Origin: Haliotis cracherodii
Lineage: Eukaryota
DNA: 64,000 bases
NCBI RefSeq assembly: GCF_022045235.1
Contig: NW_027266308.1
Location: 68,944,001-69,008,000 of the forward strand
Direction of reading: 5' to 3'
This document shows, piece after piece, positions 3,406 to 54,701 of the stretch (positions are counted from its first letter, which is position 1; every line of letters begins with the position of its first letter). A program made the position numbers and the translations under genes. The notes under the pieces were generated by a model. That model did not search any database. It was not told where the DNA came from and was given only the letters and a program-made list of their open reading frames with translations.

Positions 3406-3464
3406 CTGCCCCGCCGTGTCGAACAGCCCCAGCTGGTAGGGTGTGTCCCTGATCGTGACGGTCA
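3406..3464 (-). CDS. Rho GTPase gene C, coding exon 2 (59 bp): (V)TVTIRDTPYQLGLFDTAGQ
   Basis: tttcag acceptor, CAG|gtacg donor; phase 1 start joins exon 15419-15551 in frame; canonical G3 motif DTAGQ. Exon 3 not found in the window. Confidence 0.95.
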
Positions 3465-3545
3465 CTGAAACACAATCAGAAAACTACAGTCACAGGGAGA
3501 TAAATAAAGGAGGCATGACATTCCTATTATACAAATAGCATCGAA

Positions 3546-3812
3546 GGGCCCGTGGACATCCGGGGTGGAATAGGTCTTCAGCAACCCATGCCTGCCGTGA
3601 AAGGCGACTATGCTTGTCGTAAGAGGCTACTAACGGGACCTGGTGGTCAGGCTCGTTGACTTGGTTGATGCATGTCATCGTATCCCAACTGCGTGGATCG
3701 ATGTTCATGATGTAAATAACTGGATTCTCTGGTCCAGACTCGATTATTTACAGATCCCCGTCATATAGCTAGAATATTGCTGAGTGCAATTTAAACAACA
3801 AACAAACAAACA
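3546..3812 (+). mobile_element. SINE-like family B
   Basis: Full-length match to family B with (CAAA)n tail; catcgaa repeated on both flanks. Confidence 0.85.
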
Positions 3813-4579
3813 ACATCGAAATCTCCAAGTCTGACGTTTTGATTGATTGGTACAAGTGAATCACGTGCGTTCAAAGGGCTTTAAGTCATAAAAACTTGTC
3901 AAAACAGGTAAACGTGTAACAGGGTTGATCGGTAATGGGGAGGTGGGGTTTTAACTTATCTTTAAACTTAACTTCACCAACCACTCCACAATTGCACCAA
4001 ACCGCCCTAGCTTCCGCCGAATCAACTTTTAGGATTTTCGTTGATGAGAAACAATTTGTGTTTTTGTGTGGCTTTCACAATGAAACTATTAGTCACTGCC
4101 CCCACCAGTATACAGTCGCCACTGCACCTAGATCGAGTTACATTGTGACAGTTGACAACACCGTGTACACACAATACAAGAGGCGACATGCACTAAGTCT
4201 AGGTTTACATCTCAATACAAGAGAAGGGGTCATTGAGGACGGCTGTTCTGCACAACTCGACCAAACACAAAACTGTTCCATGATGTCTAGCACGAGAAAA
4301 TATGCGCACTACCAACTTAAGATTAGTACTCAGTAACAATGAGGTAATAAATTCGCATGTACATCTAGGGAAATATGAAAATTATAGCACATCCCGCGAG
4401 CATCCAATACCTTGTGTGTCATCAGTCGGTGAGTGAATCATGCTTAACTCCGCAGTCAGTTATAGTCTAGTTATATCACGACTGCTGTAAAAGTGGGTCG
4501 GACAAACAAATGGGTGATAGTATGAGCACCGAACAAAGCCATCAAAATACGCTAAGACAATCCTTTTAGCATGTAAGTT

Positions 4580-4800
4580 CGTTTGTTTGTTGTTTAGCGC
4601 CGCAATAAGCAAAATTCCAGCTATATGACGGCGGTCTGCAAATAATCAGTCAGGACCAGACAATCCAGTGATTAACATCTTGAGCATCGATCCTAGCAAT
4701 TGGGATACGATGACATGCATCAGCGAGCCTGACCACCCGGTCCCGTTTGTCGCCTCTTACGACAAGCATGGGTTGCTGAAGACCTCTACTAACCCGGATT
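4580..4800 (-). mobile_element. SINE-like family B (single-hairpin variant)
   Basis: Similarity to other B copies. Confidence 0.8.
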
Positions 4801-4889
4801 TACGATCGAGAAACACACCGCTTTTAAGTTCCCAGATGTGGGAGGAAAGCCCGAAGTGATGCAGGTCTTAGATGTTTACCACTTTGTTG

Positions 4890-4990
4890 AAACCCTCGAG
4901 CACTGGTATGGTGCTGACAAACCAAGAAACATAATCTGGGCGAACAGGGATTCGAACCCACAATCATAGGTTTCTGGCGTGCCCAAGAGC
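4890..4990 (-). mobile_element. Degenerate tRNA-derived repeat, family D
   Basis: B-box GGGTTCGAATCCC on minus; ctcgag..ggtatggtg.tgacaaac...ctgggc.aa..gggattcgaacccac.atca is shared with 56310-56445. Confidence 0.55.
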
Positions 4991-5054
4991 ACTTGATCTT
5001 GATCCTGTAGATACACTGCATCAATCTGCTGACTATGTTCTGTCTACTTGACCT

Positions 5055-5161
5055 GGGCCTCGTTCCACATTGCGATCGTAGAACTACGACTGTCATAAGT
5101 CTATTTCAAAGAATGGACATACGATATCTTTGCGCTACGTTCGCTTTGTGGAACGGGGCCC
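5055..5161. mobile_element. Small MITE, PIF/Harbinger-like termini
   Basis: TIRs gggcctcgttccaca / tgtggaacggggccc (14/15 match). Confidence 0.6.
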
Positions 5162-51270: not shown

Positions 51271-51967
51271 CTACAAAAGACAAGAAACCCGATACAGCAA
51301 AGGATGCTACATAATCTGTATCATTTACTTAAAGAATATGAATATAAATTGTGTTTCCCAAAAGAATATCACTTTTGAAAGAACAATGATCACATGTCTA
51401 GGGTATCCTTGGTCGGGGTCAGATTACGTCCCCAGAACCTAGTGCTTGCCTTAAGAGCAGACTAAATTGGGGATTGGTTGGTCAGGGTCTGTAGCTTAAT
51501 CCGTTGATCATGTTATCCAACAGCGGGCTGTCTGGCCCTGACTCAAATATTTACAGGGCGTCGTAATATAGCTTGGATGCCGCGGTTTAAAACAACATTC
51601 ACCCAGGGCGCCAATTTGGGTGGCAGGCAGCCCACGGATGATGTCACGAAGAGTAAGTGCGTGTCTTGAGACAAGGGCCTATCCTTCATGTAATGTAATA
51701 TCATATGTTTTCTTGAAGAGTTTTAAAAAAGTCATCTGCGTCTTACTTTTCTTTTTCAAAATAAACAAAGGCATGTGAGGATTTTGAGCTGTGCGGGCGA
51801 GTGAAACTGACACTCGTTCTCAGACACAGATCTGACGTGTTGGCGTTGGGACCATGAAGACTTCAGCTAACGGGACAACCATTCTATATAACCAACAGCA
51901 CCCTGCAAATCTAAGGCTCGATTTGGGGTTTATGACAAGGGGTTGAGGGGCTGTCTGTGGCACTGAC

Positions 51968-52056
51968 CAGTCCCAGCGTGTCGGTGAAGTCCAGGTCGTA
52001 ACGTTGTCCGTCCACCTGGATATTGGGGTAGGTGCTCTGGTTGAAACCGGTACCAG
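51968..52056 (-). CDS. Atypical Rho GTPase gene A, exon 2 (89 bp): (A)GTGFNQSTYPNIQVDGQRYDLDFTDTLGL
   Basis: ttttgtttcttgttccag acceptor, CTG|gtcagt donor; phase 1 to phase 0; IQVDGQRYDL beta-strands; G3 reads DTLGL. Confidence 0.92.
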
Positions 52057-53387
52057 CTGGAACAAGAAACAAAAGTGTCATATAAGGGTATATCAGCTGT
52101 TGAATTGAGGCACTCGTCACCACTCTCATATGTCCGTAACTTACAGGAGGGGTGCCTTCGTCTTGTCCCGGAATGGCACGTGTTGGTCACGAATGGAAAT
52201 GTAAAACTTTATCGGTTTGAGGGGAGTGTAATCGACGTGAGGATTTTGAGAATATGCGGAAAATACCAATACCAAACCCACCTGTTCATAAAATGGACTT
52301 GTCCGACATTGCCGAGGTCGGATTCTATTCAAGGAGTCATCATTTTTAAAATACGGGTACATATTTTTAAAGCTTGTACATTTCATCATCTGACTGTACT
52401 GTTTCGCCCCTCATGGTTTATTGTCCCTGCAGTGTTTTATTGTAGATATCCGGCTTCCCACGATTCAGCATAACCTGATCTGTTATCATGTAATACAAAA
52501 TAAACATTCTCTATAAGCATTTTCGTATGTCGGTGATGATTAAATCATGTAAAATGTGATGTTTTCAAAAAAACATTTTTGTTGAGAATTCTGAATCGAC
52601 ACATACAATTTAAGTCTAGAAGAAAAAAAACTTCACAAAAGTTATAGGTTCAAATGTGCCTACCAAGGGATTACATGTAAGTTTTCAAAACCAAAATGAT
52701 GTTTTTATATAACAACGCTCGAGTCCGATGCGTTGATGTTTGCTCTCCCAAACACTGATGTCTTTGTTTTCAAATTCTAGGGACATCAAAATTGTAAAAT
52801 GGTGGAGAATCTGGTTTTGTGGAAACCCTAACTGCTTGATCTGATGTGGAATATGCCGCAATTGTAATTGTTCTAGCCAAAGTAAACAAGGCGGGCTGGG
52901 CCGACTACAGTGGAAATGTCACAGCATCGGCGGGCGGCTGTCAATTGAGAAGGCCATAGGGACATTATAGCACAACATATTAACATATCATTTGATGTCG
53001 GTGGTTAATAACCGTTAATGTACAAAGTGACCCACTACATAACCACACTGGTTTAATATCAGCTGTTTTGGGGAATTGGATAACTCTTATACGAGCAACG
53101 TGATGGATCGACGCCTCTATCATCCGTCAGTCATATGAGATGTGCTAGCGAGAGGCAGCTTGCACATTGTGTGGTAGCAAGGCAAAGGAAACGGTCGAGT
53201 AGCTTCTAAATAGGACATTCTCGTGGTATGCATCACACATCAACACACGTGACGTAACATCCGGGCAGGAGTGGAATATGGTAAACTATCGTCTTCATTC
53301 GACGCCTGCTCACCCAGGGTCGCACTTGTTCGGAAATAACGAACCCAGAACTGGTCCTAGTAAACTTGTATGGAAGGTCTCATACTA

Positions 53388-54094
53388 ATGCCATATACCA
53401 TAGCCATATACCATAGTCATGTACCATAGCCATATACCATAGCCATATACCATAGCCACAAACCACAATCATACACTTTAGCGATATACCACAGTCACAT
53501 ACCACAGTCGTATACCATAGTCATATACCACAATCATACACCATAGTCATATACCACAGTCATATACCATAGTCGTATACCATAGCCATATACCATAGTC
53601 ATATACCATACCCATAAACCACAGTCATACACCAGAGCCATAAACCACATTCATACACCTATCCATATACCATAGTCATATACCACAGCCATAAACCACA
53701 GTCATATACCATAGCCATAAACCACAGTCATACACCATGGTCATACACCATAGCCATAAACCAGTCATACACTTTAGCGATATACCATTGTCATATACCA
53801 TATTCATATACCATAGGCATACACTATAGTCATATGCCATGGTCATACACCGTAGTCATACACCAGTCATACACCACAGTCATATACCATAGCCATAAAC
53901 CACAGTCATACACGATCGTCATACACCATAGCCATAAACCAGTCATACACTTTAGCGATATACTATAGTCATATACCATAGCCATAAACCACAGTCATAC
54001 ACCATAGCTAAAAACCATAGTCATACACCATAGCCATATACCATAGCCATATACCACAGTCATTCGTTAACCACAGGCATATATCATAGCCATA
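53388..54094. repeat. Minisatellite, 13-bp unit (gene A intron 1)
   Basis: catataccatag(c/t). Confidence 0.92.
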
Positions 54095-54289
54095 AAATTG
54101 TCGTGAGGTCATCGAACCGTGACATCATATAACACACCGAACATCAGGGTTGAGAGTACAGCTTGTGTATGATACAGCAGACATATACGTTTATGATTGG
54201 ACAACAGAACTGCACCCGGCAGAGAGAGGGTTCAGGCCAAATGAGTCACCACATATTTGCTTTTTGCAACTGATGGAATACCAAATCAA

Positions 54290-54540
54290 ACTGGGTATCC
54301 GTCTACATACGCATAAGGTCTACACAGCCTTAAACTGGGTACGCGTCTACTCAGTGACTTAAGACATTACACCTAGGATCGAGCTACTGATGACATGCCA
54401 CTTCAGACTGGGTATCCGTCTACATACGCATAGGGTCTAGACAGCCTTAGACTGGGTACGCGTCTACTCAGTGACTTAAGACATTACACCAAGGACCGAG
54501 CTACTGATGACATGCCACTTCAGACTGGGTATCCGTCTAC
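54290..54540. repeat. 117-bp tandem duplication abutting the gene A exon 1 donor
   Basis: ctgggtatccgtctac at 54291, 54408 and 54525. Confidence 0.88.
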
Positions 54541-54544
54541 TCAC

Positions 54545-54701
54545 CAAGATGCCACTCGAACGACGCCGGGACGCATGCTGGGTACTTCTTGGTGACGTAA
54601 GTCAGCAACAAACACGTCTTGCCCACTTGACTGTCTCCGACCACGGTCACCTTCAAGGTCCTGTGTTTGCTGACCACTCTCCGCTTGCCAGAGCTTGACA
54701 T
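54545..54701 (-). CDS. Atypical Rho GTPase gene A, exon 1: MSSSGKRRVVSKHRTLKVTVVGDSQVGKTCLLLTYVTKKYPACVPASFEWHL
   Basis: P-loop GDSQVGKT; G|gtgagt phase-1 donor; in-frame TAA about 50 nt upstream of the ATG. Absent from the ORF track. Confidence 0.94.

What the first reader, a model, noticed from the sequence alone, without database searches (positions are those of the whole stretch)
3406..54701. Tandem trio of Rho GTPases: one canonical switch plus two paralogs with built-in activating-type substitutions
Seen: three minus-strand Rho genes in tandem, all with a phase-1 intron right after switch I and a phase-0 intron right after the G3 motif. C is canonical ([22 protein letters not shown]). 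A and B are intact (ATG, GT-AG sites, G4/G5, CAAX) but both read DTxGL, have Tyr at the F28 position, a shared (D/E)WH motif and an elongated exon 2. Known: Q61L and G12 substitutions block GTP hydrolysis in Rac/Cdc42; the recognised GTPase-deficient Rho groups are Rnd, RhoH and RhoBTB. Inference: local duplication of a Cdc42/RhoJ/Q/U/V-type gene produced a lineage-specific atypical Rho subfamily that is constitutively GTP-bound or a pseudo-GTPase, controlled by expression rather than GEF/GAP cycling, next to its canonical relative. A and B are very divergent from each other yet share the derived residues, which suggests age and selection. I cannot confirm that it is undescribed.
Basis: partly seen in the sequence, partly recalled or inferred. 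Interest (0 to 1): 0.9.

Follow-up and report, generated by a model that had tools for sequence, protein, structure and literature searches.

The report
Abalone Rho GTPases missing catalytic residues
Next to a normal-looking Cdc42/TC10-like gene, black abalone carries two intact Rho GTPase genes (at least one transcribed and spliced) that have lost the two residues needed to hydrolyse GTP and to flip the switch; one of them is conserved across gastropods, so this looks like an unnamed family of probably permanently "on" Rho proteins.

Summary
Three minus-strand Rho genes lie in tandem. All three have GT-AG introns in phase 1 after codon 41 and in phase 0 after codon 61. My spliced models (A 222 aa, B 203 aa, C 197 aa) are identical to Haliotis cracherodii RefSeq proteins, which carry generic names.

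A and B have Leu at Q61, Tyr at F28, a (D/E)WH motif and a 9-10 aa insertion. Both have also lost Thr35 (Ala in A, Gly in B). The P-loop Lys/Thr, D57, G60, TKxD, the G5 motif, the Rho insert and the CAAX box are kept.

- **B is not abalone-specific.** It has orthologues in Gigantopelta, Batillaria and Elysia, and probably in the bivalve Mactra.
- **A was found only in four Haliotis species.** Its G domain is almost invariant among them.
- **A is transcribed.** RNA-like contigs from three organisms carry the exon 1-exon 2 junction of A.
- **A, B and Mactra group together.** Support is 97/92, or 86/84 without the switch columns. Their sister group is unresolved.
- **The same changes arose twice.** A clam paralogue of the C type acquired F28Y, T35G and Q61L independently.

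GTP locking is inferred, not measured. I found no paper describing the family. I rate it a new variant of a known kind, of moderate to high interest.

The parts
54545..54701 (-). Gene A, coding exon 1. ATG at 54701. Encodes the P-loop GDSQVGKT and switch I YPACVPASFEWH (Ala at the T35 position). Phase-1 GT donor at 54544.
   Evidence: DNA read and model. The junction 54545->52056 is seen in contigs of runs X1, X2 and X13. The model is identical to XP_071079777.1.
51968..52056 (-). Gene A, exon 2 (89 nt). Carries the 10-aa insertion after switch I, strands beta2-beta3 and G3 DTLGL (51968-51982).
   Evidence: Contig pieces end at 51967 (table 8).
50848..51270 (-). Gene A, exon 3 with stop codon. 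Carries the remodelled switch II (DSSLSLRLLEY), TKLD, a full-length Rho insert, CSS and the tail CCRCVIL.
   Evidence: Pfam Ras E = 4e-20. Aligns to Cdc42 residues 67-178. RNA-like contigs end at 51269/51271.
43185..43320 (-). Gene B, coding exon 1. ATG at 43320. Encodes GDGGVGKT and switch I YPESYLPGSMDWH (Gly at the T35 position).
   Evidence: The model is identical to XP_071079102.1.
40147..40232 (-). Gene B, exon 2 (86 nt). Carries the 9-aa insertion (FAHVTREPV) and G3 DTVGL (40147-40161).
33425..33814 (-). Gene B, exon 3 with stop codon. Carries switch II DEYQKLREKV, TKTD, a Rho insert 3 aa shorter than in TC10, CSAK, and a polybasic tail ending in CVVS.
   Evidence: Pfam Ras E = 4e-20. 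Best PDB match is TC10, 2atx. The acceptor is the CAG at 33815-33817.
15419..15551 (-). Gene C, coding exon 1. Encodes GDGAVGKT and YIPTVFDNY (T35 kept).
   Evidence: Identical to the H. cracherodii 'cell division control protein 42 homolog' P0257.
3406..3464 (-). Gene C, exon 2 (59 nt, no insertion), ending in DTAGQ. Exon 3 lies outside the window (L012:1447-1845, minus strand).

Best explanation
The window holds a tandem array of three Rho-family genes of black abalone (Haliotis cracherodii).

**Gene C** is the abalone copy of a mollusc-wide Cdc42/TC10-like GTPase that keeps G12, T35 and Q61.

**Genes A and B** belong to an old, unnamed, atypical Rho subfamily. The residues that hold the nucleotide are conserved: P-loop GxxxxGK(T/S), D57, G60, TKxD and the G5 motif. 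Two other residues are gone. The catalytic Gln61 is replaced by Leu (Met in Batillaria). The switch-I Thr35, which ties switch I to Mg2+ and the gamma-phosphate, is replaced by Gly or Ala. The effector loop is rebuilt, with (D/E)WH in place of DNY and a 9-10 aa insertion that is predicted to form a short helix before beta2.

**Most likely mechanism (inferred).** The proteins bind guanine nucleotide but cannot hydrolyse GTP, alone or with an ordinary RhoGAP, and their switch I no longer reports the nucleotide state. They would then act as permanently GTP-loaded, prenylated membrane adaptors with their own partners. The amount made, turnover and lipid-dependent localisation would govern them, not GEF/GAP cycling.
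- B ends in a farnesyl-type CVVS after a polybasic stretch.
- A ends in a geranylgeranyl-type CVIL preceded by two further Cys.

**Shown here:** gene structure, intactness, transcription and splicing of A, conservation, and the residue states.

**Inferred:** nucleotide binding, lack of hydrolysis, and the mode of regulation.
For: **Gene models and residues**
- Exon/intron models with GT-AG sites, identical to RefSeq proteins.
- Pfam Ras on all exons.
- Alignment through the Rho insert to Cdc42 and TC10.
- Residue table.

**Predicted structure**
- AF2 models have the full G-domain fold: B pLDDT 87.3, A pLDDT 84.9. Both show an extra short helix at the insertion.
- Best structural matches of the B model are Cdc42, TC10, RhoA and Rac, with TM 0.8-0.9.

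**Transcription of A**
- The joint 52056->54545 (CT..AC on the + strand, that is GT..AG on the minus strand) appears in contigs of three runs from three organisms and three studies.
- It is absent from a DNA-like run that reads straight through intron 2.
- Exon word depth is 10-70 times intron depth.

**Constraint on A**
- Four Haliotis species differ at only 7 positions in the roughly 185-residue G domain, while both tails vary freely.
- Of six listed coding differences in related species, four are synonymous.

**Constraint on B**
- Orthologues in Gigantopelta (69% identity), Batillaria (51%) and Elysia (45%) keep G35, the insertion, L/M61, DEYxKLRE, (T/L/M)KxD, SA(K/R) and C-(V/A)-(V/I)-S.

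**Common origin of A, B and the Mactra protein**
- Careful ML tree: 97/92 with the insertion columns not used.
- 86/84 after removing the P-loop, switch I and switch II columns.

**Established knowledge**
- Q61L blocks intrinsic and GAP-stimulated hydrolysis in Ras/Rho proteins.
- T35 is the Mg2+/gamma-phosphate ligand of switch I.
- Rnd and RhoH are GTPase-deficient through changes at positions 12 and 61 and are controlled by expression and turnover (review PMC13236570).
Against: - No biochemical measurement exists; everything about nucleotide state is inferred from sequence.
- Loss of T35 may weaken Mg2+ and nucleotide affinity, so the proteins could be largely nucleotide-free or fast-exchanging and not locked.
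- A residue other than Gln at position 61 does not by itself prove inactivity. Rap proteins have Thr61 and use a GAP that supplies the catalytic residue, and the Mactra relative has Thr at this position.
- B keeps Gly12.
- The RNA evidence comes from contigs of runs whose RNA nature is only guessed, and it covers A only. The exon 2-exon 3 junction of A is supported by contig ends, not by a listed joint.
- Splicing of B rests on sequence, orthologues and the RefSeq model.
- The A+B+Mactra clade consists of long branches, and the AU test cannot reject A arising from the C type separately (p = 0.17).
Confidence: 0.6

Rival explanations
1. A and B are still cycling switches that use a non-standard catalytic arrangement. 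A dedicated GAP would supply the missing catalytic residue, as RapGAP does for Rap (Thr61), and they would cycle between GDP and GTP states.
For: All nucleotide-binding motifs and G60 are conserved. B keeps Gly12. The Mactra relative carries Thr at position 61, as Rap does (my own knowledge). Switch II of B is strongly conserved across gastropods (DEYxKLRE), as would be expected of a regulator-binding surface.
Against: The loss of T35 removes the switch-I sensor as well, so even with hydrolysis the canonical conformational switch would be impaired. Leu or Met at position 61 is the classical GAP-insensitive state. A has also lost Y64, D65 and R66, which are used by Dbl-family GEFs and by RhoGAPs. 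No candidate partner GAP was identified.
Confidence: 0.17
2. A and B are nucleotide-free pseudoGTPases, that is, structural scaffolds that keep the G-domain fold but no longer bind GTP or GDP.
For: T35 is lost. A has G12S/A13Q in the P-loop and a rebuilt switch II. The effector loop carries an insertion.
Against: GxxxxGK(T/S), D57, G60, TKxD and the G5 S-A/S residues are kept in A across four species and in B across the gastropod orthologues found. Known nucleotide-free pseudoGTPases typically lose these motifs (my own knowledge).
Confidence: 0.12
3. Gene A, or both genes, is a relaxed duplicate drifting toward pseudogenisation. The shared odd residues would be neutral decay plus long-branch attraction.
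For: A was found only in Haliotis. It has the longest branch and the most altered switch II.
Against: The reading frame and splice sites are intact. A is transcribed and spliced in three organisms. The G domain of A differs at only 7 positions among four species while the tails vary. Synonymous changes outnumber non-synonymous ones among the listed differences. B is conserved across the gastropod orthologues found. The clam paralogue with the same T35G/Q61L changes is not pulled into the clade, so the tree is not driven by those sites alone.
Confidence: 0.04

Closest known systems
TC10/RhoQ-RhoJ and Cdc42 (the Cdc42 branch of classical Rho GTPases)
   Same: These are the best sequence and structure matches. 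For B, TC10 (2atx) scores E = 1.3e-27. For A, Cdc42/RhoG score E = 3e-29. The B model matches them with TM 0.8-0.9. The Rho insert and CAAX box are present. The three-exon gene structure is shared with gene C, a second TC10-like gene and a RhoU-like gene of the same genome. The A tail (CCxCAAX) resembles palmitoylatable TC10-type tails (my own knowledge).
   Different: Q61 is replaced by L or M, and T35 by G or A. DNY is replaced by (D/E)WH. There is a 9-10 aa insertion between switch I and beta2, and switch II is altered. Identity to Cdc42 or to C is only about 38-47%. Tree placement inside this branch is neither supported nor rejected.
Rnd1-3 and RhoH (recognised GTPase-deficient Rho proteins)
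   Same: The expected working principle is the same: substitutions at catalytic positions, constitutive GTP loading, and control by expression, turnover and localisation (PMC13236570). B has a farnesyl-type CAAX, as Rnd proteins do (my own knowledge). A language-model feature search listed a RhoH cluster among its top look-alikes of B (a lead only).
   Different: No Rnd or RhoH entry is among the best 60 sequence matches or the best 50 structure matches. According to Li et al. 2015 (PMC4669188, Table 2), RhoH is confined to vertebrates and molluscs have a separate Rnd gene. From my own knowledge, Rnd and RhoH keep the switch-I Thr and lack the exon-2 insertion. B keeps Gly12, the position whose loss defines Rnd and RhoH.
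Mollusc-wide C-type 'cdc42 homolog' (gene C). It may be the 'Tc10' of Li et al. 2015.
   Same: It is the tandem neighbour, with the same intron positions and phases, and it is a Rho with a CAAX box. A clam paralogue of this type (Ruditapes XP_060588113.1) independently shows G12A, F28Y, T35G and Q61L.
   Different: C-type proteins keep G12, T35 and Q61 in the gastropod and bivalve sequences inspected, have no insertion, and are 56-76% identical to one another. They are only 31-42% identical to A and B family members.

Membership tests
Rho family of the Ras superfamily | Ras-type G domain with G1-G5 motifs | tested here: met
   Pfam PF00071 hits exons 1 and 3 of A and B. GxxxxGKT, DTxG, TKxD and S-A/S-x are present. 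AF2 models show the G-domain fold.
Rho family of the Ras superfamily | Rho insert between beta5 and alpha4 | tested here: met
   A aligns without gaps to Cdc42 residues 67-178 across the insert. B aligns to TC10 with a 3-aa shorter insert. Helices are predicted at 144-152 in A and 130-135 in B.
Rho family of the Ras superfamily | C-terminal CAAX prenylation box | tested here: met
   A ends in CVIL and B in CVVS. Both are conserved in the orthologues.
Classical cycling Rho switch (Rho/Rac/Cdc42/TC10 type) | Catalytic Gln61 and the switch-I Thr35 | tested here: not met
   A has A35 and L61. B has G35 and L61. B orthologues have G35 and L or M at 61.
Cdc42/TC10 branch | Phylogenetic nesting with Cdc42, RhoJ/Q and C-type sequences | tested here: inconclusive
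   The free ML tree leaves the A+B+Mactra clade in a polytomy. Forcing it together with the TC10/C-type group costs 9.4 lnL units, AU p = 0.16, which is not rejected.
Cdc42/TC10 branch | Shared gene structure: phase-1 intron after codon 41 and phase-0 intron after codon 61 | tested here: met
   A, B, C, the C37 TC10-like gene (L013), the RhoU-like gene (L014/L015) and L016 share both positions. Canonical Cdc42 (L017) shares neither; the Rac-like gene (L018) shares only the intron after codon 61; RhoA-type genes (L002) lack the intron after codon 61 (their codon-41 position was not examined).
RhoBTB | BTB domains C-terminal to the GTPase domain | tested here: not met
   The proteins are 222 and 203 aa and end in CAAX. 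Only Ras and Roc Pfam hits were found.
Rnd | Closest similarity to Rnd proteins; loss of Gly12; retained switch-I Thr | tested here: not met
   No Rnd chain is among the best 60 sequence matches or the best 50 structure matches, although Rnd structures exist in the PDB. B keeps G12 and both lack T35. No Rnd sequence could be placed in the tree, so the phylogenetic part is untested.
RhoH | Orthology to vertebrate RhoH | not tested
   No RhoH sequence was available to the tools. Li et al. 2015 list RhoH only in vertebrates. A RhoH cluster appears as a feature look-alike, which is a lead only.
RhoU/RhoV | Orthology to RhoU/V | tested here: not met
   The genome has its own RhoU-like gene (L009, L014/L015) with DTAGQ, PTAYDNY and a CCFLG tail. 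In the trees it groups with the Cdc42 set and not with A or B.

The most novel reading that the evidence does not exclude
A and B define an unnamed molluscan Rho subfamily that dates back at least to the gastropod-bivalve ancestor and has given up both the catalytic Gln61 and the switch-I Thr35 while keeping nucleotide binding. That would make it a GTP-loaded 'non-switch' with a new helical effector insertion. A clam TC10-like paralogue reached the same F28Y/T35G/Q61L combination independently. This coupled set of changes would then be a repeatable evolutionary route for turning a Rho switch into a constitutive adaptor.
Probability: 0.4. Interest if true: 0.72.

Novelty: new variant of a known kind. 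Interest (0 to 1): 0.62.

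Why it matters
GTPase-deficient Rho proteins (Rnd, RhoH, RhoBTB) are few, mostly studied in vertebrates, and poorly understood. 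A separate invertebrate subfamily would add a natural experiment on what a Rho protein can do without cycling. It has been conserved across the gastropod orthologues found, carries the classical 'oncogenic' Q61L change together with loss of the Thr35 sensor, and has a novel insertion in the effector loop.

The independent recurrence of the same residue triad in a clam suggests that the changes are functionally coupled.

There is also a practical point. These genes are labelled 'cdc42 homolog', 'ras-like GTP-binding protein RHO', 'uncharacterized protein' or even 'Ras association domain-containing protein 2'. Mollusc transcriptome and immunity studies that report 'cdc42 homolog' may be mixing true Cdc42 with these atypical proteins.

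Tried and rejected
**Tools and steps that failed or were limited**
I could not test synteny of A, B and C in H. asinina, Gigantopelta, Batillaria, Elysia or Mactra, and I had no orthologous DNA for a codon-based dN/dS.
I re-ran it reading the same exon from the locus files.
- The joined spliced models were never sent to a search tool. Searches used single exons by reference, or the database proteins that proved identical to the models.
- The careful 68-row tree did not finish in two runs. I replaced it with a 37-row set.
- Read laying allowed a single call, so splicing of B was not checked with reads.

**Ideas tested and rejected**
- That A's nearest paralogues in the genome (C56 cluster, 46% identity to exon 3) are further atypical copies. 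They are canonical RhoA-type genes with [11 protein letters not shown]. No other A- or B-type copy exists in the genome.
- That the 'DTAGL' hit P0198 is a natural relative. It is an engineered, His-tagged, LOV-fusion Rac1 Q61L.
- That long ORFs between the genes are further genes. They fall on minisatellites and have no credible Pfam hit.

**Searches that found nothing relevant**
- The bivalve Rho survey (PMC4669188) discusses neither Q61 nor G12 states and gives no sequences in the files held.

Full report
**What is in the sequence**

A six-frame motif scan finds exactly three Rho-type G3 motifs, all on the minus strand:
- DTLGL at 51968-51982.
- DTVGL at 40147-40161.
- DTAGQ at 3406-3420.

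Reading the DNA around them gives three gene models with ATG starts and GT..AG introns:

| Gene | Exon 1 | Exon 2 | Exon 3 | Length |
|---|---|---|---|---|
| A | 54701-54545 | 52056-51968 | 51270-50848 | 222 aa |
| B | 43320-43185 | 40232-40147 | 33814-33425 | 203 aa |
| C | 15551-15419 | 3464-3406 | outside the window (L012) | 197 aa |

- C's third exon lies 2.3-2.6 kb beyond the left edge of the window.
- In all three genes the first intron is phase 1, one codon after the DNY or (D/E)WH motif. The second is phase 0, directly after residue 61.
- For B, the 'Q' that an ORF reading places after DTVGL is the CAG of the acceptor. The protein therefore reads DTVGL-DEYQKLR, which is colinear with [12 protein letters not shown].
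- The window is G000:C45:68944001-69008000 of a 1.18-Gb assembly.
- Gene C is 100% identical to a Haliotis cracherodii RefSeq protein.
- All three of my models equal RefSeq proteins of that species letter for letter. They are named 'uncharacterized protein' (A), 'cdc42 homolog' (B) and 'cell division control protein 42 homolog' (C).

**Residue states (Cdc42 numbering; alignment A3)**

| Feature | A | B | C |
|---|---|---|---|
| Position 12 | S | G | G |
| Position 13 | Q | G | A |
| Position 28 | Y | Y | F |
| Position 35 | A | G | T |
| Positions 38-40 | EWH | DWH | DNY |
| Position 61 | L | L | Q |
| Switch II | DSSLSLRLLE | DEYQKLREKV | EEYTSLRMLSY |
| G4 | TKLD | TKTD | TQVD |
| G5 | CSS | CSAK | CSAL |
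| C-terminal tail | CCRCVIL | KKKSCVVS | CIIL |

- A lacks one residue before V33.
- A and B also carry a 10-aa and a 9-aa insertion between residue 42 and beta2. This is the 'elongated exon 2': 89 and 86 nt against 59 nt in C.
- The loss of Thr35, which this finding does not mention, matters as much as Q61L.
- C keeps G12, F28, T35, DNY and Q61, but its switch II is derived. That is characteristic of its mollusc-wide type.

**They are real Rho proteins**
- Pfam Ras matches exons 1 and 3 of both A and B.
- A's exon 3 aligns without gaps to Cdc42 residues 67-178, across the Rho insert.
- B's exon 3 matches TC10 best, with an insert 3 aa shorter.
- AlphaFold2 models built on a 44-sequence alignment give the complete G-domain fold: B pLDDT 87.3, A pLDDT 84.9. 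In both, a short extra helix sits at the (D/E)WH-plus-insertion segment, at moderate confidence.
- Foldseek ranks Cdc42, TC10, RhoA and Rac first for the B model. No Rnd or RhoH entry is in the top 50.

**Expression**
- Runs sharing 20-29% of the words of the 4.3-kb gene-A stretch were found. Their kind is recorded only as 'RNA?'.
- Contigs of three such runs, from three coded organisms and three studies, carry the joint 52056->54545. The skipped ends read CT..AC on the + strand, which is GT..AG on the gene's strand. This is exactly my exon 1-exon 2 junction.
- The fourth run behaves like DNA: it reads straight through intron 2 and lacks the joint.
- Contig pieces stop at 51269/51271 and at 51967, which are the other two exon edges.
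- Word depth over exons is 10-70 times that over introns.
- Taken together, this shows that A is transcribed and spliced as modelled for intron 1. For intron 2 the data are consistent but not direct.
Its model rests on canonical splice sites, colinearity, conservation of the encoded protein across four gastropod lineages, and the RefSeq models.

**Distribution and constraint: gene A**
- A was found only in H. cracherodii, H. rufescens, H. rubra and H. asinina.
- Among these the G domain (about 185 residues) differs at only 7 positions, while the N-terminal 13 residues and the hypervariable tail change freely.
- Six coding differences were listed for two related organisms. Four are synonymous, one is V133I, and one lies in the tail. 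The list is incomplete, so this is only a rough sign of purifying selection.

**Distribution and constraint: gene B**
- B has orthologues in the four abalones and in three further gastropods:
  - Gigantopelta aegis (Neomphaliones), 69% identity.
  - Batillaria attramentaria (Caenogastropoda), 51% identity, reading DTVGM.
  - Elysia marginata (Heterobranchia), 45% identity, reading DSFGL and misnamed 'Ras association domain-containing protein 2'.
- All keep G35, the insertion (SE[FY]xH[VL]T..PV), DEY[QE][KR]LR, KxD, SA[KR] and a C-(V/A)-(V/I)-S box.
- From my own knowledge, these lineages split in the early Palaeozoic. If so, the atypical state has been held for hundreds of millions of years.
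- A profile search of 1.84 billion representatives also returned a bivalve protein, Mactra antiquata 'GTPase cdc42'. It has G12S, no Thr35, a longer insertion at the same place, DTIGT, TKTD and CVLS.
- In this genome there is one A and one B and no further copy.

**Relationships**
- A careful ML tree (LG+C20 PMSF, 37 rows) unites A, the B family and the Mactra protein with support 97/92. The insertion columns were excluded automatically.
- After I removed the variable P-loop positions, switch I and switch II, the clade remained at 86/84.
- Its sister group is unresolved. Forcing it together with the TC10/C-type group is not rejected (AU p = 0.16). Neither is the alternative that A arose from the C type separately from B (p = 0.17).
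- C-type proteins form a well-supported mollusc-wide clade (99/97) that joins Xenopus RhoJ and a Lingula protein weakly (84/82).
- Gene structure gives independent evidence. A, B and C share both intron positions with a second TC10-like gene (L013), the RhoU-like gene (L014/L015) and one more gene (L016). Canonical Cdc42 (L017) shares neither position. The Rac-like gene (L018) shares only the intron after codon 61. The RhoA-type genes have no intron after codon 61.
'C is the parent' is not shown.

**A convergent case**
- Ruditapes philippinarum XP_060588113.1 has G12A, F28Y, T35G and Q61L but no insertion.
- It is 57% identical to C and nests inside the bivalve C-type clade beside Dreissena (95/91).
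- The same residue triad therefore arose a second time from a C-type gene.
- This argues that the changes are functionally coupled. It also serves as an internal control, because these few sites do not drag a sequence into the A/B clade.

**How it most likely works (inferred)**
- The residues that bind phosphate, Mg2+ (T17) and the guanine base are conserved. This argues for retained nucleotide binding.
- Leu or Met at position 61 removes the residue that positions the attacking water, and it is the classical GAP-insensitive state.
- Loss of Thr35 disconnects switch I from the gamma-phosphate and Mg2+.
- The proteins would then be GTP-loaded by default and unable to turn themselves off. They would present a fixed, lineage-specific effector surface made of (D/E)WH plus the inserted helix.
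- A has in addition lost Y64, D65 and R66 of switch II.
- Control would then come from expression, turnover and lipid anchoring, as described for Rnd and RhoH (PMC13236570). B has a farnesyl-type box with a polybasic stretch. A has a geranylgeranyl-type box with two extra Cys.
- The rivals are a dedicated GAP that supplies the catalytic residue (as for Rap), a nucleotide-free scaffold, or relaxed drift. The last is largely excluded.

**Comparison with what is known, and novelty**
- These proteins work like Rnd or RhoH, but they are not members of those groups by any test I could run, and they are not RhoBTB or RhoU/V.
- The bivalve Rho survey of Li et al. [quoted passage not shown] It does not discuss residues 12, 35 or 61. 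Its 3-exon, 201-aa 'Tc10' may correspond to the C type, since Mizuhopecten P0295 is 201 aa, but I could not verify this.
- Searches for a gastropod or mollusc GTPase-deficient Rho found nothing.
- The gene models are public but generically named.
- I classify the finding as a new variant of a known kind: a further atypical, probably GTPase-deficient, Rho subfamily.

**Limits**
- No Rnd, RhoH or RhoBTB reference sequences could be put in the tree.

Noticed in passing
window 9040-61989 (for example 45650-48531, 21534-23078, 24624-25761, 30689-31945, 60855-61989): The window is unusually rich in minisatellites: 27 TRF rows with units of 13-119 nt and up to about 130 copies. They create long open frames on both strands that have no credible Pfam match.
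   Followed up: partly
window 52040-52470 (intron 1 of gene A): A high-copy interspersed repeat. Summed word depth is 17,000-84,000 in the DNA-like run X19, against about 40 in the flanks, with many rearranged joints.
   Followed up: no
G000:C56:21.10-21.28 Mb (L002, L004-L008, L010): A tandem cluster of at least eight canonical RhoA-type genes ([27 protein letters not shown]). One copy (L010) has an in-frame TAG. This is a lineage expansion of RhoA in abalone.
   Followed up: partly
P0218 (Ruditapes philippinarum XP_060588113.1): A clam paralogue of the C type with G12A, F28Y, T35G and Q61L but no insertion. It nests beside the Dreissena C type, so the atypical triad arose independently.
   Followed up: partly
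P0113 (Elysia marginata GFS14474.1): A clear B-type Rho GTPase deposited under the name 'Ras association domain-containing protein 2', which is a naming error in the source record.
   Followed up: yes
P0105 (ENA, 786 aa, organism unknown): A predicted protein with three Rho domains separated by TKPSGPE-type repeats. Their G3 motifs read DTAGK, DTAGQ and DTAGL. It may be a true multi-Rho protein or a fused gene model.
   Followed up: no
G000:C45:15.61-15.84 Mb: About ten further small-GTPase-like single exons in a cluster, only 31-39% identical to A's exon 3. They were not classified.
   Followed up: no
window 54286-54540: A 117-nt unit repeated 2.2 times lies directly after the exon 1 donor of gene A, in the first 260 nt of intron 1.
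   Followed up: no
window 59131-59264: A run of 134 N (assembly gap or masked stretch).
   Followed up: no
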